This document shows, one piece after another, positions 12,946 through 51,246 of a stretch of DNA of 53,802 nt. This DNA comes from Octopus sinensis (Eukaryota). A model generated the notes under the pieces. That model had not been told where the DNA came from and did not search any database. It worked only from the letters and a program-made list of their open reading frames with translations. The translations under genes were made by a program, and so were the position numbers. The DNA is taken from assembly GCF_006345805.1 (NCBI RefSeq), contig NW_021832633.1:1-53802 (forward strand), in the 5' to 3' direction. Each line of letters starts with the position of its first letter. Within the stretch, counting starts at the first letter, position 1.

Positions 12946-13209
12946 ATTATATTACATTATATATATATATATATATATATACAGAAAGAGAGAGTGGGGT
13001 GAGACAGCAAGCACACGTCATTGGCCAGGCCTAAGAAGGCCGAAGCACAGGGGCTATTTTTTATGCCCCACACCTACATATATTTATGTTTCTTTTTTAA
13101 AACACAGCGCTTCTATAACATAATCCAAGGCGAAAACCGTTGTATTTGGCCTGACAACGGTATATATATGCTACAAGTATGTTACAAAGTGTGCTACAAA
13201 GATGGCTAT

Positions 13210-18712: not shown

Positions 18713-18713
18713 A

Positions 18714-18831
18714 TACGAGGGGTGTATGAAAAGTCTTGAGCCTAAAAAAAAAACAAAAAAAAAACATGGTACGAGACTTTTGATGAAGGTATAAGACTTC
18801 AAGGCTCAAAACTTTTCATACAGCCCTCATA
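18714..18831. mobile_element. 118-bp mariner-type MITE
   Basis: 30-nt inverted termini including TA (18714-18743 vs 18802-18831) match at 27/30 positions and start TACGAGGG. Confidence 0.75.
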
Positions 18832-18870
18832 TATTCATATATATAATTGAAAAATGTGTATGAAATATAT

Positions 18871-18905
<35 letters not shown>

Positions 18906-18927
18906 CTTATATATATATATTATACAT

Positions 18928-19222
18928 ATAGAATGGTTTGTATACTGTCAATCTACCAAAACGGACAGTAGTGGGTACACCACCGTTGTATAGCCCTAGG
19001 AGGCATCGAACGCCTCCTGACAGCTTCGACACTTTTTTTTCCCTGTGTCCTTATCTACATATACGAAGGGGGGTTTGTCTCCACTTCGTATATGTATATA
19101 AGGACCACAGAAAAAATGTGTCAAAGCTGTCAGGAGGCGTTCGATGCCTCCTAGGGCTATACAACGGTGGTGTACCCCCTACTGTCACGTTCTTGTAGAT
19201 TGACAGTATACAACCATTCTAT
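18928..19222. repeat. 295-bp foldback palindrome (MITE-like)
   Basis: Arms of ~140 bp around a 15-nt loop (19069-19083), including a 54-bp perfectly matched block. Confidence 0.92.
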
Positions 19223-19515
19223 CGCCCCACCACCGTACATGTCTCTACGAGAGATTTAGAAATTCATATTTCTTATATATATTATATATATAGATATATA
19301 TATATATATATATATATAGTTGAAATTTATGGGAAACAAAAAACGTAAACAGTGTGATGAACATCAAGCATCTGTATTAGTTTGACGCTCGGGAAAATAA
19401 AGAAAAGTCTTTTACGTTTCGAGCCTACGTTCTTTAAAAGAAAGGAGTAAGAGAAATATCTATATGTATATATATAAACATACGCACGCACATATATCTG
19501 AATGTGTGCGTGTGT

Positions 19516-22676: not shown

Positions 22677-22812
22677 ATAAAATTCGAATTCTGAAATTAC
22701 ATACCAGGCCCTAACTACATAGTCAAGTAGATATAAAGTTTTGGGGCATTCATTCACAGAACTTTTTTTTTCATTTTTAAAGCACTGACGAAATAAGATA
22801 ATCTTTTCTACT

Positions 22813-23328
22813 CTTGGCACAAGGCCAGAAATTTTGGGCGAGGGGCAGTCGATTAGATCAACCCCAGTACGCCACTGGTACTTAATTTATCGACCCCGAA
22901 AGAGGGAAAAGCAAAGTTGATCACGGCGGAATTTGAACTCAGAACGTAAAGACAGACGAAATACCTATTTCTTTACTACCCACATGGACAAACAAGGACA
23001 GAGAGAGGACAAACAAGGACAGACAAACATATTAAGTCGATTATAACGGCAGACGAAATACGGCTACGTATTTCGCCCGGTGTGCTAACATTTCTTATTT
23101 CTTTACTGCCCACAAGGGGCTACACACACGGCAGACAAACAAGGACAGAAAAATTGATTAAGTCGATTATATCGACACCAGTACGTAGCTGGTACTTATT
23201 TAATCGACCCCGAAAGAATGAAAGGCAAAGTTGACCTCGGCGGAATTTGAACTCAGAGCGTAAAGACAGACGAAATACCGCTAAACATTTCGCCCTGTGT
23301 GCTAACGTTTCTGCCAGCTCGCCGCCTT
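22813..23328 (-). mobile_element. Family A SINE multimer
   Basis: Head at 23328 followed by repeated bodies joined at gacgaaatac(c)tatttcttt junctions. Confidence 0.8.
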
Positions 23329-23727: not shown

Positions 23728-24141
23728 CTCTTTTACTCTTTTACTCTTTTACTTGTTTCAGTCATTTGACTGCGGCCATGTTGGAGCACCGCCTTTAGTC
23801 GAGCAAATCGACTCCAGGCCTTATTCTTTGTAAGCCTAGTACTTATTCTATCGGTTTTTTGCCGAACCGCTAAGTTACTGGGACGTAAATCGGTTGTCAA
23901 GTGATGTTGGGGAGACAGACACAGACACACAAACATACACACACACACACGTACACATATACAAATATACATACATACGACGGGCTTCTTTCAGTTTCCG
24001 TCTACCAAATCCACTCACAACGCTTTGGTCGTTCCGAGGCTGTAGTAGAAGATACTTGCCCAAGGTGCCCCGCTATGGGACTGAACCCGGAACCATGTGG
24101 TTTGTAATGAAGCTACTTACCACACAGTCACTCCTACGCCT
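23728..24141 (-). mobile_element. Family B SINE, full length
   Basis: Head ...cacacagtcactcctacgcct, CORE-like cttgcccaaggtgcc, (ttttactc)n tail. Confidence 0.9.
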
Positions 24142-24748: not shown

Positions 24749-25215
24749 CAGCAGATGTGGTAAGTGATGATGATAATGTTTGTTGCCGTGACAACGATAA
24801 CAGGACTATCAGGCTGATAATAGTTATAACAATAAGAACAAGACTATTAAGCTGATTATACTGATGGAGCTGGTGATAATGTTTGTTACCATGGTAACAA
24901 TGACAAGAGATCTATCAAGCTGATAGTAATGACTATTTTGCATCTTAGTTATGATCATGAGGTTAAGAGTGATGTCTTTGGCTGAAATGATGGCGAAGGT
25001 TTTTGTAGCTGTCGTGTTAATAACATTAGTATATGCTTGAATTGTTGCCGGAACTCCCTTATCACGTGATTCTATTCAACCGGAAATCATCAGTGGTTTC
25101 TACATTAGAGGATGATACTCCAGAATTATCAAAAGTACAAAAGTGGGTAAATGAATATACATAAAATCTTATCAAACTTCACTAACACCAACTAATATTA
25201 CCAGAAACATTGCAA

Positions 25216-25940
25216 GGCAGTGAGCTGCCAGAATCGTTAGCACAGCGGGAAAAATGCTTAGCGGTATTTCGTCTGTCTTTACGTTCTGAGTTCAAATTCC
25301 GCCGAGGTCAACTTTGCCTTTCATCCTTTTGGGGTCGATTAAATAAGTACCAGTTATGCACTGGAGTCGATATAATCGACTTAATCCGTTTGTCTGTCCT
25401 TGTTTGTCCTCTCTGTGTTTAGCCCCTTGTGGTATTTCGTCTGCCGTTACGTTGTGAGTTCAAATTCCGCCGAGGTCGACTTTGCTTTTCATTCTTTCGG
25501 GTTCGATTAAATAAGTACCAGTTACTCACTGGGGTCGATATAATCGACTTAATCCGTTTGTCTGTCCTTGTTTGTCCGCTCTGTGTTTAGCCCCTTGTGG
25601 GTAGTAAAGAAATAGGTATTTCGTCTGTCTTTATGTTCTGAGTTCAAATTCCGCCGAGGTCGACTTTGCCTTTCATCCTTTCGGGGTCGATTAAATAAGT
25701 ACCAGTTACGCACTGGGGTCGATATAATCGACTTAATCCGTTTGTCTGTCCTTGTTTGTCCTCTCTGTGTTTAACCCCTTGTGGGTAGTAAAGAAATAGG
25801 TATTTCGTCTGTCTTTATGTTCTGAGTTCAAATTCCGCCGAGGTCGACTTTGCCTTTCATTCTTTCGGGTTCGATTAAATAAGTACCAGTTACGCACTGG
25901 GGTCGATATAATCGACTTAATCCGTTTGTCTGTCCTTATT
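25216..25940 (+). mobile_element. Family A SINE tetramer (one tRNA head plus four tandem bodies)
   Basis: Bodies restart at ggtatttcgtctg at 25263, 25431, 25615 and 25799 (periods 168, 184, 184). Confidence 0.92.
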
Positions 25941-26523
25941 TAGCGGCATTTCGTCCGCCTCATTATTACTGTTAAAGCGGCGAACTAACAGAATCGTTGG
26001 CAAAATGCATAGTGGCGTTTTGTTGGTCTCTATGTTCTGAGTTCAAAACCCACCGAAGTCGACTTTGCCTTTCAACATTTCCGGGTCGATAAGATAAGTA
26101 CCTGTTCTGCACCAATATTATCACACGCATAACCACAAAACGCTACCATAAATGCTTCTAGAAGTACCGCAAGTACCACCACAAAAGAACTTCACAATCA
26201 CAAGAGACAACCCTAGAAATTTCGTTGACACACACACACATCAATACATGCAATCCCTATTTCTCTTTTCCCATTGCCACAAACCTACTAAAGTCGCCAC
26301 AATCTGAATTCCGATCAACATAGACATCTCCACGAACAAGACCACAATCGCCATTAATATCACCACAAACACCGCCACAAACACTTCCAAAATGGCCACG
26401 AACATTTACCCGAAGCATCATCACAATCACCATCGCAATCATCAGTAACATCACACGAAACACCATCACTACACACACAACAGCAGTCGATCCCTTCTGT
26501 CTCTATCACTATCGTCATCATTA

Positions 26524-28000: not shown

Positions 28001-28402
28001 TTCTTTTACTTGTTTCAGTCATTTGACTGAGGCCATGTTGGATCACCGCCTTTAGTCGAAGAAATCGAACACCAGGATTTATTCTTTGTAAGCCTAGTAG
28101 TTATTCTATCGGTCTCTTTTGCCGATCCGCTAAGTGACGGAGACGTAAACACACCAGCATCGGTTGTCAAGCGATGTTGAGGGATGAACACAGTCACACA
28201 AACATATATATATATACATATACATATATACATATATACGACGGGTTTCTTTCAATTTCCGTCTATCAAATCCACTCAAAAGGCTATGGTCGGCCCGAGG
28301 TTATAGTGGAAGACACCTGCCTAAGGTACCACGCAGTGGGAATGAACCCAGAACAATGTTGTTGGTAAGCAAGCTACTTACCTCACAGCCACTCCTGCGC
28401 CT
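28001..28402 (-). mobile_element. Family B SINE with a short head duplication (~28403-28430)
   Basis: Same body as 23728-24141; cacagccactcctgcg occurs twice. Confidence 0.88.
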
Positions 28403-29355: not shown

Positions 29356-29419
<64 letters not shown>

Positions 29420-29436
29420 CTCTATCTCTCTATTTC

Positions 29437-29481
<45 letters not shown>

Positions 29482-29492
29482 GATCTATTGTC

Positions 29493-29526
<34 letters not shown>

Positions 29527-29590
29527 ATATCTATCTATCTATCTATCTATCTAATTCTATATATCTATCTATCTATCTATCTATCTATCT
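29356..29590. repeat. (CTAT)n tract 1, left flank of LINE copy 1
   Basis: Read directly; abuts ctcgacatgg. Confidence 0.97.
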
Positions 29591-29812
29591 CTCGACATGG
29601 ACGGACGCTAGTCAAATGGGCTCCACGTAAGTTGGTCATTTTGTACGTTGAAAATTGTTTATTGTGAAATATTTTGTGTTTAAAAGTTGTGCAACAACAT
29701 CCACTGCAAACCTTGATTAATATCTACACAAAATTTTGCCCCTTGTGGGCAAAATTTAAAAGAAAAAATTCTCATAGCCTTCGTGGTTTCATTTAGCCAT
29801 TTTATTTCCAAA

Positions 29813-31670
29813 ATGGCCACTGGTCACCACGAGGCTGAGGTGCAAGTCAAGCGTGACGCAGAGGCAGAAAAACAGGATGCTCTGTTACCTTACGCTGAAC
29901 CTGACAACTCCGCCACCATCAACATCGACAACAGCAACAAATACAAAACAAAGGTCGCAAGGCCAAGCACCGTCAACACATCAGTGAGTCCACCACCACC
30001 ACCAACACCGACAACAACACCATGGCAGAATCTGCTACTAAAACTGCTATCCCTACTAAAGACGTCGCCACCAATAACAATACCAACATCACCATCACCG
30101 CCACCAAAGACCGTGCCGTCAATGCTACTAATACTACTAACACCACCGCCGTCACCAAGAACGATACAACAACAACAACAAAACAACAACAACGACGACG
30201 ACAACAACAATTCCCTTCAACCACTGCTCACTCCATCACCAACAAGTGAAAAACAAATAACGACACAAGCAAACGAAATGCCGAAATTTGCGCTAATGCA
30301 GGACTAAATTACGCAGGCAATTTTCCACCCCTTGCTAGTTGCATAATCAGCAACCACAAACCTACAACCCACACCCCTGCCATCAACACCAACACACCGG
30401 CAGTAACAACAATAACAAAACAACAACAAACTTCGCCGAGGCGATAAAAGAAAAGGTAACAAAAGTTTCGTTTACTACACAACAGATTAAAGATTGCAGA
30501 AACCTTATTACAAATCAAAACGGAAAAATACTCTTACACATACCTCAGCACATACTGAATGAGAGAAAAAAAAGACAATTGTATATAAAATCACAAATAA
30601 AAAAACAAAAAGTCCAGAAAAGGCAAGCACAGACAAAGTCGAAAAGTGCTTACGCCCCATCTGGGGATACAAGGATTGTGTGACTTGGGCGAACAAGTTC
30701 GCACACGTACAGGTGGTTTTTCAGAATGAAGAGTTGGCGAAGAAATTCTCAACGATAACCCTTCATTCTGATGAACTAACGTTGACACCGAGTTACCTCG
30801 GCCAGAAGGTGACGAAAGTCATTATCAGTGGTGTCCCCCAAGTGACTACAACACTGTGGATTACATCCGCCTTAACATCCGAAATGGAGGACTTAAACAT
30901 CCTAGATATCGGTGTTTCGGAAAACAAGGACTGGCTGGGAAAGAGAATAGAGTTCCTCTTCCACATAAGTCAAGAGGACATAAATAAAATCCCCACCCAC
31001 GTACATCTTGAGGATGGCCGCAAGTTATACGTAGTAGTCGAGGGCAGAAGGCCACGATGCTATACATGTGGCAGTGAGGCACACCTCAAAAAGGAGTGCA
31101 AATCTGCCGCAAAATACAACAACAACAACAGCCACAGGAAAAATCACAAAAGCCAGGATTATTGCCCACACCACAATATGGACAGCTAGTCAAGAAGCTG
31201 TATGCGGAAATGCAGGAAAAACAACAAAGAACAAGCCAACCCAACCAAACAACACCAACACCAGCGCCAAGAACAGAATCATCACCACCAACAACAAATA
31301 AACCAATTCCAACACCAAGAATAACAACGAAGAAGACAAGCACCAAGGATGTAGGAGAGACAATAACCACAACAACCCCCCAGCAACACCCTCCCCGCGC
31401 ACCACAACAATATCTACAACCGCACAAACACACCCAGACGCTTTACCCTTGCCCCCTGCTGATTCGTCAGACTTTTCATCTAACGATGAAAGTTCGACAG
31501 AATGGCAAATAGCCACAGGGGGTAAAAGAAAAAGATCAAGAAAAACCAAACAAGAAATCGCAACCAAAGCAGGGAGATACCTGAACCCTGAAAACTCCAT
31601 ACACAACAAAACAAGCACCAACACCACAAAAACAATGCTATCAGCGATAGACACAAAGACTCCAAACTAA
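29813..31670 (+). CDS. ORF1 (Gag-like nucleic-acid-binding protein), frameshifted in this assembly
   Basis: ATG at 29813, T/N/Q-rich N-terminus, RRM-like HVQVVFQNEELAKKF, zinc knuckle CYTCGSEAHLKKEC (CX2CX4HX4C, 31058-31099), EWQIATGGKRKR, stop TAA 31668-31670. Confidence 0.8.
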
Positions 31671-31918
31671 TGGAGTACATCACAGGATACACAAACATTT
31701 GTGAAGATGACTTTAAAAATAGCAATCATCCACGCACTACACCACCCAAACACATCAAAATACTACACATCACACAAACACAACACCACAAACTCAAAGC
31801 CCTCTTCCCAAATGCTGTAGGGGGTTTCCAGAAATATCTGTCCCAAAAACTATATAGAAACCTCCTCGAAAACACATCAAAGAACGAGGAAGCCAAAACT
31901 TTCGACACAAGTAAGTAA
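31670..31918 (+). CDS. 82-aa ORF overlapping the ORF1 stop via TAATG (separate small ORF, or the ORF1 C-terminus after a frameshift)
   Basis: MEYITGYTNICEDDF...KLKALFPNAVGGFQKYL...; open in both copies. Confidence 0.5.
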   Translation: MEYITGYTNICEDDFKNSNHPRTTPPKHIKILHITQTQHHKLKALFPNAVGGFQKYLSQKLYRNLLENTSKNEEAKTFDTSK

Positions 31919-31966
31919 CTCTCTGTACTTTCATTTGTGTTTTAAAGCACACACCCCAATAGAATC

Positions 31967-34900
31967 ATGGTCAAGATTGGTTGTGTGAATGCGCATGGCT
32001 TGGGGTCTCCTTGGAAACAAGGATACCTCCTAAATGACATCAAGTCACATGATTTGGGAATCATAGCCATAAGTGAGACCAGACTCCACGAGCCACGGGC
32101 CCTAAAGTCCATGTTTGGCGGACAGTTAACATTTATTTCGCTCCCTGTCTGCCGAGGATGGGCGGTAGTGGCACCGCGGTACTTTTTCACAAGAGCCTGG
32201 ATCTCGAAGTCAAGACGATATTCGTAGACCCGGAGGGTAGACTGATCGTTCTGGATGTTGACGGCAGCAATGGGTGCGCTTTTCGACTCGTATCAGTCTA
32301 CGCACCGCCCTTAACAGGTCGGGCGGATTTCTTTCGACGTCTAGAAGTATTCTTGGGAACGTCTCGTCCTTTACTCTTAGTGGGGGATTGGAATGCTACC
32401 TTGGACACGCATGTAGACTACGTGGGTAGAGACAGAAACAGAAGGGGATGCAAATGCCTCAGAGACCTGCTCAGACGATTCCAACTGTCTGACAGGTACC
32501 GACTCGACCACCCAAATGCACCAACGTGGACATGGAGCAACCGCAGTGGGTCGTCGAGATCGTATCTAGATAGGATACTGTGTAGGACAGTAGACAAGGA
32601 TAACTTAGGATGTCCACAATTCCACACAGTCAGCTACACGGATCACAAATTGGTGACGTGTACGCTAGACTTAGATAAGGCACATAGACAGGGTCCTGGG
32701 TACTGGAAACTGAACGCATCATTCCCGTCCAGACAAGTTTTCAGAGACCGGATTAGCACACTAGTAAAGAGGGCTTTGACGGGAGCCATCATCAACAACA
32801 AATGGTGGTTTGCCCTCAAGAGAGCAGTAAAAGCAGAAGCGATTAGGTACAGCAAAGCACTAGCCATAGATAGAAATAGAGTAGAGGTGAGCTAGTTAAG
32901 AAGCTAGAAGAGGCAATTAGAAGCGGCATCGCATCCGACGTTTTGGCGGCGAGGTTGGCCCTCGACCAACACTTCAACGCCAAACACGAAGGATGTGCTG
33001 TCAGAGCTAGGATGCGTGCTCTAAGGAACGAAGGTGTTGGAGCCGCGAGAGAGGCCCGGGTGGCAGAGGCGCAACAGGGCAACAAAGCCACCATTCGGTC
33101 ACTGGTAGATGAACAGGGGCGCGAATTGCTCGAGCCAAGTAAAATGTGTGAGGCCTTTCAGCAGCATTTTGCCCGACTGTTCGGGACGAGTGGAGGGCAA
33201 GAACGTAGGGTAGACTTCAGTGCCTACCTACATAGCCTGCCACGACTCTCGACAAGAAAGGCAGGGTGCTGCGAAGGTGCCATCACGGCGGCGGAAGTGC
33301 GGGAAGCGATGGCAGAATGCTCGAGGGACAAATCACCGGGTTTGGATGGTCTACCCTACGAATTTTACTATTGTATGCCAGACTTGTTTGGAGACGTCTT
33401 GGCAGCGGTATACTGCAACTGGCAGCAAAACGGGAGCATACCCGGTTTTGTGAGTCGAGGAGCTGTAACTCTGCTGAAGAAAGATCCAAACAAGGGAAAC
33501 ATTATAGATAACTTTAGGCCAATCACTCTGCTCAATGCAGACCTGAAAATTTTGACAAAGGTGTTAGCCAAGAGGTTGGCGCTTGTCATGGAGAAACTGG
33601 TCGACAACGCACAAACGTGCGCCGTGCCGGGCCGGAGCATCCATGACAACCTCCATCTGATGCGCTACATCATAGACAGGGTAGTTAACGAACCTGGCAT
33701 GGGTGGGGCCCTGATCAACTTGGATCAATCGAAAGCCTTTGATAGGGTAGACCATCGATACTTGGAGGCAGTCCTGAGAGCGGCTGGTTTCGGTCCCGTC
33801 TTCCGCGGCTGGATAGCTGCCTTGTACAGAGGCATCCGTTCGGTAATTCGCGTAAATGGACATCTATCGAGACCCTTCGACATTGCACGTTCGGTCCGTC
33901 AGGGATGCCCCCTCTCGGCGCTTCTATACGTATTGACTCTTGAGCCACTACTGCGGAAGCTGGCGACTCTGAGGGGCATCCCGCGAGAATTAGGATGCGG
34001 GACGAGCGTGTCTGCATACGCGGACGACGTCACCGTCATAGTGTCAAGCCACGAGCAGATCGAGCGGGTCGGCGAGACACTGAAAGACTACGAAGCAGTG
34101 ACAGGAGCAAAAATCAACCGGGAAAAGTCAGTGGGCTTGCGGCTCGGCACCTGGAGAAGCAAGCCCATGCCGTCCACCAGTACCTCCGTCGTGGGACGCT
34201 CGTTGAGTTGCTCGGGGTCTGGTTCGGTCCGGACCTCCAAATGGAGAAGAACTGGAACGAGATAACGAGTAGGGTGGTCACTCTCGCCCAGCAATGGGCC
34301 GAGAGGAAACTGTCCCTAAAAGGTCGGGCGGAGGTGGTGAACGCGTACATCGCGTCCATCATCTACTACCGCCTGACCGTCGTACCTTGTCCCGACCCTA
34401 CCATCACCAAACTAGAACGCATCCTCTTCCGCTTCTTGTGGAAAGGATGCGTCCCGATGGTCAGGCGATCCATTTGCTGTCAACACCCGTTAAAAGGAGG
34501 GCTGGGCATGCCGTGGTTGATGATGCGCAGACACGCGCTGAGACTGCGACATCTCCGGCTCTATGTAGACGACGGTGAACAGGTGTGGTCGCCGTTTGTG
34601 AGGCACGCATTCCCGCAACTCGTCTCCATGACCGAACTACAGTCGTGGATCAAAAAGAGGCCGAAGAAGGGCGAATGGCACCGCGAGTGTCGCGTTGCTC
34701 TCAAGCAACTCTGCCGTCCCGGGTCGACCTTGAGTGACTTCAACACAACCAAAGCATTCTATAGGGGATTAGTGGAGGGGAGGTACGACGACGAGCTCGG
34801 GGCAAACCTGGGCGTCGACGAGGAATACCTGACCCGCCTGTTTCAAACGACTTTCGGCCCGGGACCTATGGACAACTTCCAGAGATCCCTGGCCGGCGGT

Positions 34901-35387
34901 GCTACCGAGAAGCGCTACCCGTTCGGGATAAGCTCTATAGGCATGGCTCGAGAAACACGGGGCCGACCTGCCCGAGATGCGGGCAGAGCGACGAAACCGC
35001 TCTGCACGCAATCGTGCAGTGTCCAGCAATTTCCCACCTGTGGGCTTATGTCGAACGACTGCTGTCACGTGTGGGACGTGTCGGTTTATCAGCCGAGTCT
35101 ATCGTTAATATCGTCACGCCTCCTTCCTTCAAACGGGAAGGAAGAGCTATTTTTATCATACTTGTGGCTATGGCGAAAGAATGTATCTGGTGGACGCGTC
35201 TGAAAGGATTAGAGACAAACACTTTCCTCTCTGGTCAATCTCTCATCAACTTCTTCAAGTATTACTTGAAGAAGAAAGTGAGAGTAGAGAGGCAAGTTTT
35301 GTCTAGTGAATGTTTTAAAAAAATGGGGTGAATGTAGCAAGGATGGCACGTATGAATGACGAAGCCACCTTGACTATGATTCTATGA
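31967..35387 (+). CDS. ORF2: APE endonuclease, reverse transcriptase and C-terminal CCHC zinc finger, frameshifted
   Basis: APE motifs IGCVNAHGL, ISETRL, VYAP, GDWNA, YLDRIL, TDH. RT motifs SPGLDGLPYEFY, FRPITLLNAD, QTCAVPGRSI, LDQSKAFDRVDH, RQGCPLS, YADD (34017-34028). C-terminal CPRC-X8-H-X4-C at 34969-35022. Confidence 0.93.
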
Positions 35388-35799
35388 ACCGTAAAATTAA
35401 TACAGAGAGTTGCTTATTTGCAAAAAAAAAAAAAAAAAGAAATATAACATGTGACTTCATTGACCGAGGTTACCGTGGTCTTTTCCGTAGGCTTTCTTTC
35501 CACGGGTAAACCTCACCTGTCCTCCCCTTTACACTTCATATTGACATTTCTGTGATAACGATCCCTATTGATCAATTTTTTTCCTCTCCCCCTTTTTTTT
35601 AAACCCCCCCTTTTTGTCCTCTTTCTCTCCTTTTACGATCCCTTTTGATCGACCCCCCCTTTTTTATTTTACTTTTATTTTATTTTTTTTTTTTTTTTAT
35701 TTTATTTTTTATTTTTTAAACCTTCAAAAGAAAAGCTCTACCTTGTAATTTGTTCTATCTGTGTGCAGCCCTGTGTGGCTAATAAGAAAACATAAAGAA

Positions 35800-35862
35800 T
35801 CATATCTATCTATCATCTATCTATTTATCTATCTATCTATCTGTCTGTCCATCTATCTGTCC

Positions 35863-35916
<54 letters not shown>

Positions 35917-35927
35917 ATATCTATCTC

Positions 35928-35998
<71 letters not shown>
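35800..35998. repeat. (CTAT)n tract 2, between the two LINE copies
   Basis: Read directly. Confidence 0.97.
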
Positions 35999-36219
35999 CT
36001 CGACATGGACGGACGCTAGTCAAATGGGCTCCACGTAAGTTGGTCATTTTGTACGTGAAAATTGTTTATTGTGAAATATTTTGTGTTTAAAAGTTGTGCA
36101 ACAACATCCACTGCAAACCTTGATTAATATCTACACAAAATTTTGCCCCTTGTGGGCAAAATTTAAAAGAAAAAATTCTCATAGCCTTCGTGGTTTCATT
36201 TAGCCATTTTATTTCCAAA

Positions 36220-38065
36220 ATGGCCACTGGTCACCACGAGGCTGAGGTGCAAGTCAAGCGTGACGCAGAGGCAGAAAAACAGGATGCTCTGTTACCTACG
36301 CTGAACCTGCAACTCAACAAATCACAAACACAACAATACAAAACAAGGTCGCAAGGCCAAGCACCGTCAACACCATCAGTGAGTCCACCACCACCACCAA
36401 CACCGACAACAACACCATGGCAGAATCTGCTACTAAAACTGCTATCCCTACTAAAGACGTCGCCACCAATAACAATACCAACATCACCATCACCGCCACC
36501 AAAGACCGTGCCGTCAATGCTACTAATACTACTAACACCACCGCCGTCACCAAGAACGACAATAACAACAACAACACAACAACAACGAACGACGGACAAC
36601 AACAATTCCCTTCAACCACTGCTCACACTCATCACCAACAAGTGAAAAAATAACGACGACAAGCAAACGAAATGCCGAAATTTGCGCTAATGCAGGACTA
36701 AATTACGCAGGCAATTTTCCCCCCTTGCTAGTTGCATAATCAGCAACCACAACCTACAACCACACACCCCTGCCATCACACACCACACCACCGGCAGTAA
36801 CAACAATAACAAAACAACAACAAACTTCGCCGAGGCGATAAAAGAAAAGGTAACAAAAGTTTCGTTACTACACAACAGATTAAAGATTGCAGAAACCTTA
36901 TTACAATCAAAACGGAAAAATACTCTTACACATACCTCAGCACATACTGAATGAGGAGAAAAAAAAGACAATTGTATATAAAATCACAAATAAAAAAACT
37001 AAAAGTCCAGAAAAGGCAAGCACAGACAAGTCGAAAAGTGCTTACGCCCCATCTGGGGATACAAGGATTGTGTGACTTGGGCGAACAAGTTCGCACACGT
37101 ACAGGTGGTTTTTCAGAATGAAGAGTTGGCGAAGAAATTCTCAACGATAACCCTTCATTCTGATGAACTAACGTTGACACCGAGTTACCTCGGCCAGAAG
37201 GTGACGAAAGTCATTATCAGTGGTGTCCCCCAAGTGACTACAACACTGTGGATTACATCCGCCTTAACATCCGAAATGGAGGACTTAAACATCCTAGATA
37301 TCGGTGTTTCGGAAAACAAGGACTGGCTGGAAAGAGAATAGAGTTCCTCTTCCACATAAGTCAAGAGGACATAAATAAAATCCCCACCCACGTACATCTT
37401 GAGGATGGCCGCAAGTTATACGTAGTAGTCGAGGGCAGAAGGCCACGATGCTATACATGTGGCAGTGAGGCACACCTCAAAAAGGAGTGCAAATCTGCCG
37501 CAAAATTACAACAACAACAACAGCCACAGGAAAAATCACAAAAGCCAGGATTATTGCCCACACCAACAATATGGACAGCTAGTCAAGAAGCTGTATGCGG
37601 AAATGCAGGAAAAACAACAAAGAACAAGCCAACCCAACCAAACAACACCAACCACCAGCGCCAAGAACAGAATCATCACCACCAACAACAATAAACCAAT
37701 TCCAACACCAAGAATAACAACGAAGAAGACAAGCACCAAGGATGTAGGAGAGACAATACCACAACAAACAAACCCCCCAGCAACACCCTCCCCGCGCACC
37801 ACAACAATATCTACAACCGCACAAACACACCCAGACGCTTTACCCTTGCCCCCTGCTGATTCGTCAGACTTTTCATCTAACGATGAAAGTTCGACAGAAT
37901 GGCAAATAGCCACAGGGGGTAAAAGAAAAATTCAAGAAAAACCAAACAAGAAATCGCAACCAAAGCAGGAGATACCTGAACCCTGAAAACTCCATACACA
38001 ACAAAACAAGCACCAACACCACAAAAACAATGCTATCAGCGATAGACACAAAGACTCCAAACTAA
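36220..38065 (+). CDS. ORF1 of copy 2, frameshifted
   Basis: ATG at 36220, CCHC knuckle at 37449-37490, TAA at 38063-38065. Confidence 0.78.
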
Positions 38066-38316
38066 TGGAGTACATCACAGGATACACAAACATTTGTGAA
38101 GATGACTTTAAAAATAGCAATCATCCACGCACTACACCACCAAAAACTACACCATCAATACTACACATCACACAAACACAACACCACAAACTCAAAGCCC
38201 TCTTCCCAAATGCTGTAGGGGGTTTCCAGAAATATCTGTCCCAAAAACTATATAGAAACCTCCTCGAAGACACATCAAAGAACGAGGAAGCCAAAACTTT
38301 CGACACAAGTAAGTAA
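38065..38316 (+). CDS. 83-aa TAATG-overlapped ORF of copy 2
   Basis: Equivalent to 31670-31918. Confidence 0.5.
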   Translation: MEYITGYTNICEDDFKNSNHPRTTPPKTTPSILHITQTQHHKLKALFPNAVGGFQKYLSQKLYRNLLEDTSKNEEAKTFDTSK

Positions 38317-38366
38317 CTCTCTGTACTTTCATTTGTGTGTTTTAAAGCACACACCCCAATAGAATC

Positions 38367-41300
38367 ATGGTCAAGATTGGTTGTGTGAATGCGCGTGGCT
38401 TGGGGTCTCCTTGGAAACAAGGATACCTCCTAAATGACATCAAGTCACATGATTTGGGAATCATAGCCATAAGTGAGACCAGACTCCACGAGCCACGGGC
38501 CCTAAAGTCCATGTTTGGCGGACAGTTTAACATTTATTTCGCTCCCTGTCTGCCGAGGATGGGCGGTAGTGGCACCGCGGTACTTTTTCACAAGAGCCTG
38601 GATCTCGAAGTCAAGACGATATTCGTAGACCCGGATGTTGACGGCAGCAATGGGTGCGCTTTTCGACTCGTATCAGTCTACGCACCGCCCTTAACAGGTC
38701 GGGCGGATTTCTTTCGACGTCTAGAAGTATTCTTGGGAACGTCTCGTCCTTTACTCTTAGTGGGGGATTGGAATGCTACCTTGGACACGCATGTAGACTA
38801 CGTGGGTAGAGACAGAAACAGAGGGGATGCAAATGCCTCAGAGACCTGCTCAGACGATTCCAACTGTCTGACAGGTACCGACTCGACCACCCAAATGCAC
38901 CACCAACGTGGACATGGAGCAACCGCAGTGGGTCGTCGAGATCGTATCTAGATAGGATACTGTGTAGGACAGTAGACAAGGATAACTTAGGATGTCCACA
39001 ATTCCACACAGTCAGCTACACGGATCACAAATTGGTGACGTGTACGCTAGACTTAGATAAGGCACATAGACAGGGTCCTGGGTACTGGAAACTGAACGCA
39101 TCATTCCCGTCCAGACAAGTTTTCAGAGACCGGATTAGCACACTAGTAAAGAGGGCTTTGACGGGAGCCATCATCAACAACAAATGGTGGTTTGCCCTCA
39201 AGAGAGCAGTAAAAGCAGAAGCGATTAGGTACAGCAAAGCACTAGCCATAGATAGAAATAGAGTAGAGGTGAGCTAGTTAAGAAGCTAGAAGAGGCAATT
39301 AGAAGCGGCATCGCATCCGACGTTTTGGCGGCGAGGTTGGCCCTCGACCAACACTTCAACGCCAAACACGAAGGATGTGCTGTCAGAGCTAGGATGCGTG
39401 CTCTAAGGAACGAAGGTGTTGGAGCCGCGAGAGAGGCCCGGTGGCAGAGGCGCAACAGGGCAACAAAGCCACCATTCGGTCACTGGTAGATGAACAGGGG
39501 CGCGAATTGCTCGAGCCAAGTAAAATGTGTGAGGCCTTTCAGCAGCATTTTGCCCGACTGTTCGGGACGAGTGGAGGGCAAGAACGTAGGGTAGACTTCA
39601 GTGCCTACCTACATAGCCTGCCACGACTCTCGACAAGAAAGGCAGGGTGCTGCGAAGGTGCCATCACGGCGGCGGAAGTGCGGGAAGCGATGGCAGAATG
39701 CTCGAGGGACAAATCACCGGGTTTGGATGGTCTACCCTACGAATTTTACTATTGTATGCCAGACTTGTTTGGAGACGTCTTGGCAGCGGTATACTGCAAC
39801 TGGCAGCAAAACGGGAGCATACCCGGTTTTGTGAGTCGAGGAGCTGTAACTCTGCTGAAGAAAGATCCAAACAAGGGAAACATTATAGATAACTTTAGGC
39901 CAATCACTCTGCTCAATGCAGACCTGAAAATTTTGACAAAGGTGTTAGCCAAGAGGTTGGCGCTTGTCATGGAGAAACTGGTCGACAACGCACAAACGTG
40001 CGCCGTGCCGGGCCGGCATCCATGACAACCTCCATCTGATGCGCTACATCATAGACAGGGTAGTTAACGAACCTGGCATGGGTGGGGCCTGATCAACTTG
40101 GATCAATCGAAAGCCTTTGATAGGGTAGACCATCGATACTTGGAGGCAGTCCTGAGAGCGCTGGTTTCGGTCCCGTCTTCCGCGGCTGGATAGCTGCCTT
40201 GTACAGAGGCATCCGTTCGGTAATTCGCGTAAATGGACATCTATCGAGACCCTTCGACATTGCACGTTCGGTCCGTCAGGGATGCCCCCTCTCGGCGCTT
40301 CTATACGTATTGACTCTTGAGCCACTACTGCGGAAGCTGGCGACTCTGAGGGGCATCCCGCGAGAATTAGGATGCGGGACGAGCGTGTCTGCATACGCGG
40401 ACGACGTCACCGTCATAGTGTCAAGCCACGAGCACATCGAGCGGGTCGGCGAGACACTGAAAGACTACGAAGCGGTGACAGGAGCAAAAATCAACCGGGA
40501 AAAGTCAGTGGGCTTGCGGCTCGGCACCTGGAGAAGCAAGCCCATGCCGTCCACCAGTACCTCCGTCGTGGGACGCTCGACGAGTTTTGCTGCTCGGGGT
40601 CTGGTTCGGTCCGGACCTCCAAATGGAGAAGAACTGGAACGAGATAACGAGTAGGGTGGTCACTCTCGCCCAGCAATGGGCCGAGAGGAAACTGTCCCTA
40701 AAAGGTCGGGCGGAGGTGGTGAACGCGTACATCGCGTCCATCATCTACTACCGCCTGACCGTCGTACCTTGTCCCGACCCTACCATCACCAAACTAGAAC
40801 GCATCCTCTTCCGCTTCTTGTGGAAAGGATGCGTCCCGATGGTCAGGCGATCCATTTGCTGTCAACAACCCGTTAAAAGGAGGGCTGGGCATGCCGTGGT
40901 TGATGATGCGCAGACACGCGCTGAGACTGCGACATCTCCGGCTCTATGTAGACGACGGTGAACAGGTGTGGTCGCCGTTTGTGAGGCACGCATTCCCGCA
41001 ACTCGTCTCCATGACCGAACTACAGTCGTGGATCAAAAAGAGGCCGAGAAGGGCGAATGGCACCGCGAGTGTCGCGTTGCTCTCAAGCAACTCTGCCGTC
41101 CCGGTCGACCTTGAGTGACTTCAACACAACAACCAAAGCATTCTATAGGGGATTAGTGGAGGGGAGGTACGACGACGAGCTCGGGGCAACCTGGGCGTCG
41201 ACGAGGAATACCTGACCCGCCTGTTTCAAACGACTTTCGGCCCGGGACCTATGGACAACTTCCAGAGATCCCTGCCTGGCGGTGCTACCGAGAAGCGCTA

Positions 41301-41767
41301 CCCGTTCGGGATAAGCTCTATAGGCATGGCTCGAGAAACACGGGGCCGACCTGCCCGAGATGCGGGCAGAGCGACGAACCGCTCTGCACGCAATCGTGCA
41401 GTGTCCAGCAATTTCCACCTGTGGGCTTATGTCGAACGACTGCTGTCACGTGTGGGACGTGTCGGTTTATCAGCCGAGTCTATCGTTAATATCGTCACGC
41501 CTCCTTCCTTCAAACGGGAAGGAAGAGCTATTTTTATCATACTTGTGGCTATGGCGAAAGAATGTATCTGGTGGACGCGTCTGAAAGGATTAGAGACAAA
41601 CACTTTCCTCTCTGGTCAATCTCTCATCACACTTCTTCAAGTATTACTTGAAGAAAAAGTGAGAGTAGAGAGGCAAGTTTTGTCTAGTGAATGTTTTAAA
41701 AAAAGATGGTGAATGTAGCAAGGATGGCACGTATGAATGACGAGCCACCTTGACTATGATTCTATGA
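38367..41767 (+). CDS. ORF2 of copy 2 (APE+RT+CCHC), many frameshifts and a 21-nt in-frame deletion
   Basis: Same motifs as copy 1; YADD at 40394-40405. Confidence 0.9.
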
Positions 41768-42171
41768 ACCGTAAAAATAATACAGAGAGTTGCTTATTTG
41801 CAAAAAAAAAAAAAAAAAAAATATAACATGTGACTTCATTGACCGAGGTTACCGTGGTCTTTTCCGTAGGCTTTCTTTCCACGGGTAAACCTCACCTGTC
41901 CTCCCCTTTACACTTCATATTGACATTTCTGTGATAACGATCCCTATTGATCAATTTTTTTCCTCTCCCCCTTTTTTTTAACCCCCCTTTTTTTTTTGTC
42001 CTCTTCTCTCCTTTTACGATCCCTTTTGATCGACCCCCCCTTTTTTATTTTACTTTTATTTTATTTTTTATTTTTTATTTTTTATTTTTAAACCTTCAAA
42101 AGAAAAGCTCTACCTTGTAATTTGTTCTATTTCTGTGCAGCCCTGTGTGGCTAATAAAGAAACATAAAGAA

Positions 42172-42223
42172 CATCTCTATCTATCTATCTATCTATTTGT
42201 CTATCTATCTATCTGTCTATCCG

Positions 42224-42315
<92 letters not shown>
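42172..42315. repeat. (CTAT)n tract 3, right flank of copy 2
   Basis: Read directly. Confidence 0.97.
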
Positions 42316-42316
<1 letters not shown>

Positions 42317-43239: not shown

Positions 43240-43654
43240 CTTTTCTCTCTTTTCTCTCTTTTACTTGTTTCAGTTATTTGACTGAGGCCATGCTGGAGCA
43301 CCACCTTCTGGTCGAGTAAATCGACCCCAGGACTTATTCTTTGTAAGCCTAGTACTTATTCTATCAGTCTCTTTTGCTGAACCGCTAAGTTACGGGGACA
43401 TAAACACACCAGCATCGGTTATCAAGCAATGGTGGGGGGACAAACACAGACACACAAACATATACACACATACATATATATACATATATACGACGGGCTT
43501 CTTCCAGTTTCCGTCTACCAAATCCACTCACAAGGATTTGGTCGGCCCGAGGCTATAGTAGAAAACACTTGCCCAAGGTGCCACGCAGTGGGAATGAACC
43601 CGGAACCATGTGGTTGGTAAGCAAGCTACTTACCACACAGCCACTCCTGCGCCT
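43240..43654 (-). mobile_element. Family B SINE, full length
   Basis: Head ...cacacagccactcctgcgcct at 43654; (ttttctctc)n tail. Confidence 0.9.
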
Positions 43655-50032: not shown

Positions 50033-50151
50033 TATTAATGATGATGACAATAATAATAATAATACTAACATCGAAATATACCTTAGGAATTGTGCCTATA
50101 TTAGAAAGGGTTATTATTATTATTATTATTATTATTATAATTATTATTATA

Positions 50152-50221
<70 letters not shown>

Positions 50222-50222
<1 letters not shown>

Positions 50223-50680
50223 AGGGCGGTGAACTGGCAGAATCGTTAGCACACTGAACGAAATGCTTAGCGCTATTTCTCCCGTCGCTACGTCCTGAGT
50301 TCAAAATTCGCCGAGGTCAACTTTACCTTTCATATTTTCGAGGTCGATAAATTAAGTACCAGTTACGCACTGGGGTCGATGTAATCGATTAACCTCCCTC
50401 CCCCAAATTTCTGTCCTTGTGCCTATAGTAGTAAGGATCATTATTATTATTATTATTATTATTATGAAGGCGACCTGCTAGAATCATTAGTGCATCGAAC
50501 AAAACGCTAAGTGTATTTCTTTCGGCTCTTAACGTTCTGAGTTCAAATACCTAGACGGCTATCTTTGCCTTTCATCTTTTCGGGGTCGATGAAATAAAGT
50601 ACAGGCCAAATAGTGGAGTCGATGTAATAGACTTACCCCCTCCACTCAAAATTCTTGGCCTTTGTCTCAAAACTGGAAGG
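50222..50680 (+). mobile_element. Two family A-related SINEs separated by (TTA)n
   Basis: Heads at ~50222 and ~50466. Confidence 0.75.
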
Positions 50681-50809
50681 AATTATTATTGTTATTGTTA
50701 TTGCTGTGTTCTCTTCTTGTTATTGCTGTATCTTGTTTTGGAGTCATCCTCATCATCGTCATCGCCTCACCGCCATTATTGTGGTTGCTGCTCCTGCTGG
50801 CCCTGTTGT

Positions 50810-50851
50810 TGTTGTTGTTATTATTATTATTATTATTATTACTATTATTAC

Positions 50852-50895
<44 letters not shown>

Positions 50896-51022
50896 TATTA
50901 TTATTATATTATCCATTCATCATCCTCATTATCATCATTATTTATTATATTATTATTATTATTATTATTACTATTATTATATTCTTTATTATTATCATCA
51001 TATTATTATCAATATTATTATG

Positions 51023-51070
<48 letters not shown>

Positions 51071-51246
51071 GTTATTATTACTATTATATTATATTATTAT
51101 TATTATTATCATTATTATTATTACTATTTTTAGTATTATATTATTATTATTATTATCATTATTATTATTACTATTATTATTATATATTATTATATTATTA
51201 TTATTATGCTGTTGTTGTTGTTGTTGTTGTGTTTGTGTTGTTGTTG
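50810..51246. repeat. (TTA)n/(TTG)n low-complexity block
   Basis: Read directly. Confidence 0.95.

What the first reader, a model, noticed from the sequence alone, without database searches (positions are those of the whole stretch)
29356..42315. Tandem full-length Tx1-clade retrotransposons apparently targeted to the (CTAT)n microsatellite
Seen: (CTAT)n - 6.2-kb LINE - (CTAT)n - 6.2-kb LINE - (CTAT)n. Both copies have the same orientation and the same junctions: 5' ...ctatctatct|ctcgacatgg and 3' cataaagaa|(t)cat(a/c)tctatc. There is no poly(A) tail at the 3' end. Established: Tx1-clade elements use an APE endonuclease and include sequence-specific families (Kibi at TC repeats, Koshi at TTC repeats, Keno at U2 snRNA, Dewa at tRNA-array spacers). 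Inference: this family cleaves the (ATAG)n strand and primes reverse transcription there. I do not know of a described (CTAT)n-specific Tx1 family or a cephalopod example, but cannot search. Tetranucleotide targeting in a microsatellite-rich genome would give a large safe-harbour niche, and the APE domain would be a candidate new site-specific nuclease.
Basis: partly seen in the sequence, partly recalled or inferred. Interest (0 to 1): 0.88.

Follow-up and report, generated by a model that had tools for sequence, protein, structure and literature searches.

The report
Octopod LINE pair inside (ATCT)n microsatellite
Two near-identical 6.2-kb copies of an L1/Tx1-type jumping gene sit head to tail inside an (ATCT)n microsatellite, and related elements in another octopod form the same chains, so this lineage seems to home to repeats that match its own tail: a new example of a known habit, not a new kind of element.

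Summary
The layout is (ATCT)n, a 6,209-bp LINE, (ATCT)n, a 6,173-bp LINE, (ATCT)n. Both copies have the same orientation and the same junctions, and neither has a poly(A) tail.

The element has an ORF1 with a CCHC knuckle and an ORF2 with APE, RT and a C-terminal CCHC. Human L1 ORF2p is its best solved relative. Tx1 membership is likely from the literature but was not resolved here.

Both copies are frame-broken as assembled. One frameshift is shared. The other 55 indels are mostly 1 bp and mostly sit in short base runs, which looks like long-read noise. The pair could therefore be two insertions, one insertion duplicated, or an assembly doubling.

The targeting idea is supported from outside the window. 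In Argonauta hians, three LINEs of this lineage sit head to tail with (ATCT)n between them, and two of them are only 67-70% identical. Sister elements carry (ATT)n tails, and partner SINEs sit inside (ATT)n.

I favour homing by pairing of the RNA tail with the target. A sequence-specific APE is not shown. Tetranucleotide-targeting Tx1 families and cephalopod Tx1 elements are already published. This is a new member of a known kind, of moderate interest.

The parts
29356..29590 (+). Tract 1: free-standing (ATCT)n microsatellite upstream of copy 1. It reads (ATCT)16 ... (ATCT)10 ... (ATCT)8 ATAT (ATCT)6 AATTCTATAT (ATCT)7.
   Evidence: TRF, direct reading and unit parse. No LINE or SINE 3' box lies upstream of it, so it is not the tail of an older copy.
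29591..35799 (+). LINE copy 1 (6,209 bp), from CTCGACATGG... to ...CATAAAGAA.
29813..31500 (+). ORF1 region of copy 1. It starts MATGHHEAEV at 29813 and has long A/C-rich low-complexity stretches. A CCHC zinc knuckle (CYTCGSEAHLKKEC) lies at 31058-31099. The frame is broken as assembled, and the 3' limit is approximate.
   Evidence: ORF list, weak Pfam zf-CCHC hit with E=8e-4, three-frame translation and coordinates. An ORF1 of the same type (RRM-like region plus ...RRPSCFLCGTKGHIKSAC) occurs in Argonauta copy B.
31967..32886 (+). ORF2 APE endonuclease domain of copy 1. One frameshift near 32128-32146 is specific to copy 1. Another at about 32886 is shared with copy 2.
   Evidence: Pfam Exo_endo_phos, E=1.3e-11. 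Frames, shared frameshift.
32886..34217 (+). ORF2 reverse transcriptase domain of copy 1 (YADD at 34017-34037).
   Evidence: Pfam RVT_1, E=1.1e-32. Best solved relative is human L1 ORF2p at 3.6e-35, against R2 at about 1e-21.
34193..35328 (+). ORF2 C-terminal region of copy 1. The CCHC motif CPRCGQSDETALHAIVQC lies at 34969-35022. There are frameshifts near 34200 and near 34870-35060.
   Evidence: Homologues carry Pfam zf-RVT (PF13966) here.
35759..35799 (+). Conserved 3' box of copy 1 (CTGTGTGCAGCCCTGTGTGGCTAATAAGAAAACATAAAGAA). It includes AATAA-type signals and is not followed by poly(A).
   Evidence: Alignment A2. The box is shared with LINEs in L001, L002, L010 and L011, and with tRNA-SINEs of Argonauta and of the window.
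35800..35998 (+). Tract 2, between the copies. It reads TCAT (ATCT)2 ATC (ATCT)2 ATTT (ATCT)4 GTCT GTCC (ATCT)2 GTCC (ATCT)13 ATAT (ATCT)2 CTCT (ATCT)17. Its left ~135 nt mirror the whole of tract 3.
35999..42171 (+). LINE copy 2 (6,173 bp). It is 99.1% identical to copy 1 at aligned bases. Its ORF2 has at least 8 frame changes and a 21-bp in-frame deletion near 38632.
42172..42316 (+). Tract 3. It reads C ATCT CT (ATCT)4 ATTT GTCT (ATCT)3 GTCT ATCC GTCT (ATCT)8 ATTT (ATCT)13 ATAT, then the unique flank AGGCATCTG.

Best explanation
This is a young L1-group (probably Tx1) LINE. It belongs to an octopod lineage that ends in a conserved 3' box followed by a short microsatellite instead of poly(A). 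Here the microsatellite is (ATCT)n; in sister families it is (ATT)n.

The lineage, and the tRNA-SINEs that carry the same 3' box, integrate preferentially where the DNA already carries the repeat found at their own 3' end. That can be a free-standing microsatellite or the tail of an older copy. The result is head-to-tail chains of the form repeat-element-repeat-element.

Proposed mechanism (inferred): the APE nicks the (AGAT)n strand. The (AUCU)n end of the RNA pairs with the freed DNA end, and reverse transcription starts there. The target is then chosen largely by complementarity between tail and target, as L1 and Alu favour A-rich tails. Any sequence preference of the nuclease would act on top of this.

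Shown: the anatomy, the junctions, the shared 3' box, and the recurrent chains in two species.

Inferred: the priming step, and the relative roles of tail and nuclease.

Whether the window pair is two insertions or one insertion later doubled cannot be decided. I lean slightly towards one insertion doubled.
For: - Domains and L1-group affinity.
- Identical junctions and no poly(A).
- Tract 1 is a free-standing microsatellite with no element upstream.
- The 3' box CTGTGT..GCCCTTGTGGCTAATAAAGAAA is shared by LINEs of the window, L001, L002, L010 and L011, and by SINEs in both species.
- Tails: (ATT)28+ in L002; (ATT)5 and (ATT)18 in L010; (ATCT)5 and (ATCT)14.5 in L011.
- Independent chain in Argonauta L011: copy A, (ATCT)5, copy B (full length, with ORF1 and ORF2), (ATCT)14.5, then the first 158 nt of a B-like copy C. 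A and B are 67-70% identical. Other perfect (ATCT)n/(AGAT)n runs make up only about 0.13% of the 54 kb of Argonauta DNA held.
- Chain in L010: a 3' end with (ATT)18, then three SINEs, then a LINE with (ATT)5.
- Array in L003: full-length relatives abut directly, period 7,547 bp.
- In the window itself: (ATT)37, SINE, (ATT)9, SINE, (TTA)n, with the two SINEs only 73% identical. SINE-SINE tail-to-head junctions at 12784/12785 and about 23048-23096, plus the array at 25214-25941.
- Tail type does not follow ORF2 similarity. The window's closest relative with a visible 3' end, L002, has (ATT)n, while the more distant L011 copies A and B have (ATCT)n.
Against: - Only one locus of this exact family could be examined. 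No other copy was found in any collection.
- The shared frameshift and the shared ~135-nt tract pattern mean the window may record a single insertion.
- Other relatives show no long microsatellite at the 3' end: the L001 LINE and a 3' fragment behind it, and a box-bearing SINE in L010. The habit is therefore a preference at most, or tails decay.
- Four other (ATCT)n/(AGAT)n tracts in the window are empty.
- Nothing here measures nuclease specificity or RNA-DNA pairing.
- The assembly is noisy.
Confidence: 0.55

Rival explanations
1. One reading: a strictly sequence-specific Tx1 family whose APE recognises and cleaves (ATAG)n/(AGAT)n, as proposed for Kibi and Koshi. The two window copies would be two independent targeted insertions.
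For: - Both copies have the same 5' junction, with the upstream tract ending in a whole ATCT unit.
- The 5' ends of copies B and C in Argonauta also follow ...ATCT.
- Published Tx1 families target (TC)n, (TTC)n, (TTCC)n and (TTTC)n (PMC4494074).
- APE identity of the window element is marginally higher to the (ATCT)n-tailed Argonauta copies (50-51%) than to the others (48%).
Against: - Relatives with the same architecture use (ATT)n or no microsatellite.
- Tail type is not monophyletic on RT or C-terminal similarity.
- APE domains of the (ATCT)n-tailed elements are only 50-59% identical, and the 2-3 point difference is within noise.
- The identical 5' junction, the shared frameshift and the shared tract pattern are equally well explained by descent from one insertion.
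- Junction phase is ambiguous by 1-3 nt, because the element starts with CTC and the Argonauta copies with AG.
- No biochemical data exist.
Confidence: 0.2
2. The window records only one insertion. The unit of LINE plus downstream tract was then doubled, either by unequal exchange between the flanking (ATCT)n tracts or by an assembly error such as two haplotypes or reads joined through the microsatellite. This is compatible with targeting or with a chance landing.
For: - Both copies carry the same 1-nt frameshift in the APE-RT linker (AGAGTAGAGGTGAGC; homologue P0003 reads ...RVEGDVVEKLEE).
- Both are disrupted at the same site near 34200 / 40576.
- The left ~135 nt of tract 2 reproduce tract 3, including ATTT, GTCT, RTCC, (ATCT)13 and ATAT.
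- The 5' junctions are identical.
- In the 2-kb core the copies differ at 0-0.2% of aligned bases.
- The 55 indels are mostly 1 bp and mostly in short base runs, which marks a noisy long-read consensus.
Against: - The right part of tract 2, (ATCT)2 CTCT (ATCT)17, does not match the right part of tract 1, (ATCT)6 AATTCTATAT (ATCT)7, as a simple exchange would predict.
- Shared indels could be systematic consensus errors in GG/GGG runs.
- Chains of clearly independent copies exist in Argonauta and among the window's own SINEs, so sequential insertion is a demonstrated habit of this lineage.
Confidence: 0.5
3. There is no targeting at all. A non-specific LINE landed in an abundant microsatellite by chance, and it was noticed only because the flanking repeats allowed it to duplicate.
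For: - (ATCT)n is common in this window, with seven tracts making up about 2% of the sequence.
- Four tracts are unoccupied.
- The finding was picked from a scan of many windows.
Against: - The same arrangement appears in Argonauta L011 with divergent copies, where free (ATCT)n is about 0.13% of the sequence held.
- The element's own 3' end in relatives (GAAATCTATTT) runs naturally into ATCT.
- Partner SINEs with (ATT)n tails sit inside (ATT)n.
Confidence: 0.1

Closest known systems
Microsatellite-targeting Tx1-clade LINEs: Kibi (TC)n, Koshi (TTC)n, and crocodilian Tx1 families at (TTCC)n/(TTTC)n (Kojima & Fujiwara 2004; Kojima 2015, PMC4494074)
   Same: These are APE-plus-RT LINEs of the L1 group that are flanked on both sides by one microsatellite in a fixed orientation and lack poly(A). 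Tetranucleotide targets are already documented among them. Octopus L1-superfamily LINEs were placed in Tx1, sister to a Tx1_XT plus KoshiTn1 group, by PMC10294476 (Table S5 and tree file).
   Different: The repeat unit here is (ATCT)n and the host is an octopod. Neither is in the literature I could search. The specificity of this family rests on very few insertions. Close relatives use (ATT)n or none, which points to a labile, tail-linked preference and not a fixed nuclease specificity. Tx1 membership was not resolved here.
Microsatellite-specific LINEs of other clades: Waldo (ACAY)n and Mino (AC)n in R1, Dong (TAA)n in R4, Togen (TG)n near NeSL (PMC3812793, PMC4640811)
   Same: They show the same genomic picture, with the element embedded in one microsatellite type, and follow the same safe-harbour logic. 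Dong's (TAA)n equals the (ATT)n used by the sister families and SINEs seen here.
   Different: They belong to different clades. Dong and Togen use a restriction-like endonuclease and not an APE. The element here is closest to L1 ORF2p.
L1/Alu integration into A-rich tails of older copies (L1 endonuclease TTTT/AA preference plus poly(A) pairing); stated from my own knowledge
   Same: The target resembles the element's own tail, so new copies land in old tails and form head-to-tail clusters. This is the mechanism I propose for the present lineage.
   Different: The tail here is a tetranucleotide or trinucleotide repeat and not poly(A). Recognition also seems to involve a specific 3' box shared with SINEs (a stringent-type feature), unlike mammalian L1.
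Stringent LINE/SINE pairs with repeat tails, for example eel UnaL2/UnaSINE1 with (TGTAA)n (Kajikawa & Okada 2002); stated from my own knowledge
   Same: LINE and SINE share a conserved 3' box followed by short tandem repeats that serve in priming or template slippage.
   Different: Those are L2-clade elements and are not reported to home to matching microsatellites or to build chains.

Membership tests
APE-type non-LTR retrotransposon (LINE) | Apurinic/apyrimidinic-like endonuclease domain N-terminal to a reverse transcriptase in ORF2 | tested here: met
   Pfam Exo_endo_phos E=1.3e-11 and RVT_1 E=1.1e-32, in the right order. Colinear ORF2 homologues occur in L001, L010 and L011.
APE-type non-LTR retrotransposon (LINE) | No long terminal repeats; 5' UTR, ORF1, ORF2, 3' UTR layout | tested here: met
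   No repeats internal to a copy were found beyond the copy-to-copy match. ORF1 with a CCHC knuckle lies upstream of ORF2.
L1 group (L1 plus Tx1 clades) | RT most similar to L1-type ORF2p; C-terminal CCHC motif after the RT | tested here: met
   Best PDB sequence match is human L1 ORF2p at 3.6e-35, against R2 at about 1e-21. Most other LINE clades have no solved structure, so this comparison is limited. CPRCGQSDETALHAIVQC lies at 34969-35022. Homologues carry zf-RVT PF13966.
Tx1 clade | RT-domain phylogeny places the element with Tx1, Keno, Kibi, Koshi and not with L1 proper | tested here: inconclusive
   The RT scores 131.7 bits against a labelled bivalve L1-Tx1 consensus (T. granosa_5, PMC10294476 Data S4) and 124.9 bits against human L1, which does not discriminate. 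Indirectly, every mollusc L1-superfamily cluster in PMC10294476 Table S5, including three from O. sinensis, was classed as Tx1. No Repbase references were available for a tree.
Tx1 clade | ORF1 with an RNA-binding region plus a CCHC knuckle, not the L1-type Transposase_22 ORF1 | tested here: inconclusive
   There is a weak zf-CCHC hit only (E=8e-4, below the curated cut-off) and no Transposase_22 hit. ORF1 is frame-broken. That this ORF1 type marks Tx1 is from my memory, not checked here.
Target-specific (microsatellite-specific) LINE family | A large share of independent copies flanked by the same repeat (more than 20% of flanks in Kojima 2015, PMC4494074) | not testable with these tools
   The source genome is not in any searchable collection. 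The 24-mer of the 3' end gave 0 hits in the metagenome, viral and prokaryote collections, and the protein-based scan confirmed nothing.
Target-specific (microsatellite-specific) LINE family | Independent insertions with the same repeat on both sides, in the same orientation | tested here: inconclusive
   The window holds 1 or 2 events. Argonauta L011 holds two 5' junctions on (ATCT)n, involving copies only 67-70% identical. That is suggestive for the lineage, but the numbers are small, and there the repeats are tails of older copies.
Target-specific LINE family | Endonuclease that cleaves the target sequence specifically | not testable with these tools
   This needs a nicking assay with recombinant APE.

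The most novel reading that the evidence does not exclude
In this octopod LINE lineage the integration site may be set mainly by the RNA's own 3' repeat. A slippage-born change of the tail, from GAAATCTATTT to (ATCT)n or to (ATT)n, would then retarget the whole family and its SINEs to a different microsatellite class without any change in the protein. That would amount to a naturally RNA-programmed choice of safe harbour, and it would also seed and extend the very microsatellites it uses.
Probability: 0.22. Interest if true: 0.65.

Novelty: new member of a known kind. Interest (0 to 1): 0.4.

Why it matters
If a genome-wide census confirms it, this would add a tetranucleotide (ATCT)n class and a cephalopod host to the short list of microsatellite-homing LINEs.

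It would also identify the autonomous partner of the very abundant octopod tRNA-SINEs, because both share the same 3' box.

It offers a natural comparison for asking whether the tail RNA or the endonuclease chooses the target: sister families with (ATT)n, with (ATCT)n and with no repeat. That question bears on how LINEs find safe harbours, on how microsatellites and retroposons feed each other in repeat-rich cephalopod genomes, and on why microsatellite markers in molluscs so often sit in repeated flanks.

The idea of the APE as a ready-made site-specific nuclease is not supported by anything measured here.

Tried and rejected
1. Other copies of this exact family. A 24-mer from the 3' end (TGTGCAGCCCTGTGTGGCTAATAA) gave no hit in metagenome contigs, viral contigs or genome contigs. 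A protein-profile scan of the metagenomes matched 118 stretches, but none was confirmed.

2. Closer relatives by protein. The best are 81% (P0125), 77%, 75% and 72% identical. Their contigs (L004-L009) are 1.2-2.3 kb and stop before the 3' junction. Only L002 reaches it.

3. Fragments of the element elsewhere in the window. None were found. The other (ATCT)n/(AGAT)n tracts are not preceded by a 3' box.

4. Tx1 versus L1. The alignment supplement of PMC10294476, as stored, does not contain the reference sequences. A labelled bivalve L1-Tx1 consensus was typed in and compared, but it scores about the same as human L1.

5. Tract 1 as the tail of an older element. Rejected, because no 3' box or element lies upstream.

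6. LTR element or endogenous virus. Rejected, because there are no LTRs and the architecture is APE plus RT.

7. 5' end of the Argonauta LINE in L001. It could not be defined, because it shares no 5' similarity with L010.

8. Literature searches for an (ATCT)n/(GATA)n-specific LINE or a described partner LINE of octopus SINEs found nothing specific. Repbase and Dfam could not be searched.

For searching only, I joined the in-frame pieces of ORF2 from the two copies into a conceptual protein. It is a search query, not a claim that an intact gene exists.


Full report
**Observation.** The described layout is present. TRF reports (ATCT)n-type arrays at 29356-29590, 35803-35998 and 42176-42316. 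Direct-repeat families with spacing of 6377-6407 bp tile the interval between them. Read base by base, copy 1 runs from 29591 to 35799 and copy 2 from 35999 to 42171. Both begin ...CTATCTATCT|CTCGACATGGACGGACGCTAGT. Both end ...GGCTAATAA(A)GAAA(A)CATAAAGAA, followed by TCAT-(ATCT)n in copy 1 and C-ATCT-CT-(ATCT)n in copy 2. Neither has a poly(A) tail. Outside this locus, (ATCT)n in the same orientation occupies about 0.6-0.9% of the window, so a random landing in such a tract is roughly a 1% event.

**Anatomy.** Each copy has four parts:
- a 5' UTR of about 220 nt;
- an ORF1 that starts MATGHHEAEV at 29813, is rich in A/C-coded low-complexity sequence, and carries one CCHC knuckle (CYTCGSEAHLKKEC, 31058-31099; weak Pfam hit);
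- an ORF2 with an APE domain (Exo_endo_phos, E=1.3e-11), an RT domain (RVT_1, E=1.1e-32) and a C-terminal CCHC motif (34969-35022);
- a 3' UTR with a pyrimidine-rich stretch and a terminal box.

Among solved structures the RT is closest to human L1 ORF2p (3.6e-35), ahead of R2 proteins at about 1e-21. There are no LTRs. The element is an APE-type LINE of the L1 group.

**State of the copies.** The copies align with 6085 matches, 54 mismatches and 55 indel events. Most indels are 1 bp, and most sit in short runs of one base. In the 2-kb core the copies are 99.8-100% identical at aligned bases. This pattern is typical of an unpolished long-read consensus. As assembled, ORF2 has 4 frame changes in copy 1 and at least 8 in copy 2, so neither copy is intact on paper. 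One frameshift, in the APE-RT linker, is identical in both copies: AGAGTAGAGGTGAGC, where the homologue P0003 reads through as ...RVEGDVVEKLEE. A second site near 34200 / 40576 is broken in both copies but by different indels. These are either real shared lesions or systematic consensus errors.

**The three tracts.** Tract 1 is a free-standing microsatellite with no element upstream. Tract 3 reads C ATCT CT (ATCT)4 ATTT GTCT (ATCT)3 GTCT ATCC GTCT (ATCT)8 ATTT (ATCT)13 ATAT and then meets unique DNA. The left ~135 nt of tract 2 show the same order of interruptions: ATTT, GTCT, GTCC, (ATCT)13, ATAT. They are followed by (ATCT)2 CTCT (ATCT)17 and then copy 2. So a unit of LINE plus about 135 nt of degenerate repeat occurs twice. 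There are two ways to explain this. The degenerate tail may be copied from the master RNA at each insertion, or the whole unit may have been doubled by unequal exchange between tracts or by the assembler. The right part of tract 2 does not match the right part of tract 1, which a simple exchange would predict, but microsatellites in a noisy assembly are poor witnesses. I cannot decide between the two. The shared frameshift and the identical 5' junction tilt me slightly towards one insertion doubled.

**Relatives and the 3' box.** No protein above 81% identity exists in the 5.8-billion-protein collection. The nearest named relatives are from the octopod Argonauta hians. An alignment of 3' ends shows a conserved box, CTGTGT..GCCCTTGTGGCTAATAAAGAAAT. 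It is shared by:
- the window LINE;
- a metagenome contig, L002;
- the Argonauta LINEs in L001 and L010. The box also recurs at both LINE 3' ends in L011.

The same box ends the tRNA-derived SINEs of Argonauta. With a G for C it also ends the SINEs of the window itself: GCCCCTTGTGGGTAGTAAAGAAATAGGTA. This LINE lineage is therefore the likely autonomous partner of the abundant octopod SINEs.

What follows the box differs between elements:
- (ATT)28+ in L002;
- (ATT)5 and (ATT)18 in L010;
- TATTT or nothing much in several Argonauta elements;
- (ATCT)n in the window and in two LINEs of L011.

The common ending GAAATCTATTT already contains ATCTAT, a plausible seed for (ATCT)n by slippage.

**Head-to-tail chains elsewhere.** This is the most informative result.
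- In Argonauta locus L011, LINE A ends ...GGCTAATAAAGAAATC(TATC)4T and is followed at once by the 5' end of LINE B (AGTATTTACTT...). B has its own ORF1 with a CCHC knuckle, an ORF2 and a 3' box. It ends ...GAAACAT(ATCT)14.5 and is followed by the same 158-nt 5' end at 99% identity. That third copy is then interrupted by an unrelated APE-encoding element.
- A and B are only 67-70% identical in ORF2, so their adjacency is an independent insertion and not a duplication. Other perfect (ATCT)n/(AGAT)n runs make up about 0.13% of the 54 kb of Argonauta DNA held.
- In L010 the order is: a 3' end with (ATT)18, SINE, SINE, SINE, then a LINE with (ATT)5, all in one orientation and abutting.
- In L003, a 26-kb contig of unknown organism holding a 56%-identical relative, full-length copies abut directly with a period of 7,547 bp and no microsatellite between them.
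- In the window itself, two SINEs only 73% identical lie as (ATT)37, SINE, (ATT)9, SINE, (TTA)n. SINE tails are also followed directly by 5'-truncated SINE heads at 12784/12785, at about 23048-23096 on the minus strand, and throughout 25214-25941.

**Explanation.** Elements moved by this machinery tend to integrate where the DNA looks like their own 3' end. I therefore read the (ATCT)n association as real and as a property of the lineage. The simplest mechanism is target-primed reverse transcription started where the (AUCU)n RNA end can pair with a nicked (AGAT)n strand. This is the same logic by which L1 and Alu favour A-rich tails. It accounts for the (ATCT)n cases, the (ATT)n cases and the chains without a repeat.

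It also fits the pairwise identities. On the C-terminal region, the window element's closest relative with a visible 3' end is L002 (69% identity), which has (ATT)n. The (ATCT)n-tailed Argonauta copies are more distant (57-58% C-terminal, 58-61% RT). APE domains of the (ATCT)n-tailed elements share only 50-59% identity. A nuclease preference may well contribute, but nothing here measures it.

**Rivals.**
That regularity is ambiguous by 1-3 nt and partly explained by common descent.
- A pure chance landing followed by duplication explains the window alone, but not L011 or the SINE cases.
- Doubling of one insertion, real or by assembly, remains a live reading of the window pair. It is independent of the targeting question.

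**Comparison with what is known.** Microsatellite-homing LINEs are well established:
- Kibi (TC)n, Koshi (TTC)n and crocodilian Tx1 families at (TTCC)n/(TTTC)n in the Tx1 clade (PMC4494074);
- Waldo (ACAY)n and Mino (AC)n in R1, and Dong (TAA)n in R4 (PMC3812793);
- Togen (TG)n near NeSL, and some HERO families (PMC4640811).

L1-Tx1 families are routinely annotated in cephalopods. Thirteen recently active families are reported in O. vulgaris (PMC13282606). O. sinensis and O. bimaculoides clusters were classed as Tx1, sister to a Tx1_XT plus KoshiTn1 group (PMC10294476). L1-Tx1 is also part of the ancient coleoid repeat set (PMC8967140).

Neither tetranucleotide targeting nor a cephalopod Tx1 is therefore new. 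What I did not find described is an (ATCT)n-associated family, the 3' box shared with the octopod SINEs, or the chains. Repbase and Dfam could not be searched.

Tx1 membership itself stays unresolved by direct test. A labelled bivalve L1-Tx1 consensus scores 131.7 bits against the RT, and human L1 scores 124.9 bits. The indirect case is that every mollusc L1-superfamily cluster in PMC10294476 was Tx1.

**Verdict.**
The microsatellite association is real at lineage level. Two insertions in the window are not shown. The APE mechanism is not shown. The novelty is narrower than claimed.
- It is a new member of a known kind, with moderate interest.

The decisive work is a flank census in the source genome and in Argonauta, checks of long reads and empty sites, a proper RT tree, and tail-swap versus APE assays.

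Noticed in passing
window 25214-25941: There is a tandem array of about 3.8 units (184-bp period) of a tRNA-derived SINE. One full-length copy is followed by units that all start at GGTATTTCG, directly after the previous tail ...GTAAAGAAATA. The first junction is different (..CCTTGTGG|TATTTCG). The array could come from repeated tail-directed insertion with microhomology, or from tandem duplication.
   Followed up: partly
window 50111-51207: Two SINEs (50222-50440 and 50466-50688, 73% identical) are embedded in the same orientation in a long (ATT)n/(TTA)n region: (ATT)37, SINE, (ATT)9, SINE, degenerate (TTR)n, (TTA)131. This has the same architecture as the LINE pair but a different repeat.
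   Followed up: partly
window 12569-12947 and 22801-23328 (minus strand): There are SINE-SINE head-to-tail junctions in which a 5'-truncated SINE starts right after the previous SINE's ...AAAGAAATA tail, with 4-5 nt of shared bases at the join.
   Followed up: partly
window 29590-42175: The two LINE copies differ by 55 indels, mostly of a single base and mostly in short base runs, but by almost no substitutions in the core. This suggests the assembly is an unpolished long-read consensus, so reading frames anywhere in this window should be treated with caution.
   Followed up: yes
L003 (ENA ERZ26052130, contig ctg11195c, 26.3 kb): A 56%-identical relative forms a direct head-to-tail array with a period of 7,547 bp. 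The contig name ends in 'c', which in some assemblers marks a circular contig, as collapsed tandem arrays often appear. The source organism is unknown.
   Followed up: partly
L010 2780-9205 (Argonauta hians BAAFZT010000007.1): Five retroposons form a chain in one orientation: a 3' end with (ATT)18, three tRNA-SINEs with a spacing of about 157 bp, then a near full-length LINE ending in (ATT)5.
   Followed up: partly
L011 18075-19485 (Argonauta hians BAAFZT010000021.1): The third LINE of the (ATCT)n chain is cut after 158 nt by unrelated sequence that encodes a different APE-type endonuclease ORF (18401-19243). This is presumably another LINE inserted into it.
   Followed up: no
protein P0124: A 466-aa protein 63% identical to this LINE's C-terminal region is deposited as 'MAG: zinc-binding domain-containing protein [Herbaspirillum sp.]' on a 1.8-kb contig. 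It is almost certainly host (cephalopod) DNA binned into a bacterial genome.
   Followed up: no
window 23927-24141, 28188-28402, 43440-43654: A further dispersed repeat family has three copies of about 215 nt at 81-87% identity. It starts in AC/AT-rich simple sequence and was not identified.
   Followed up: no
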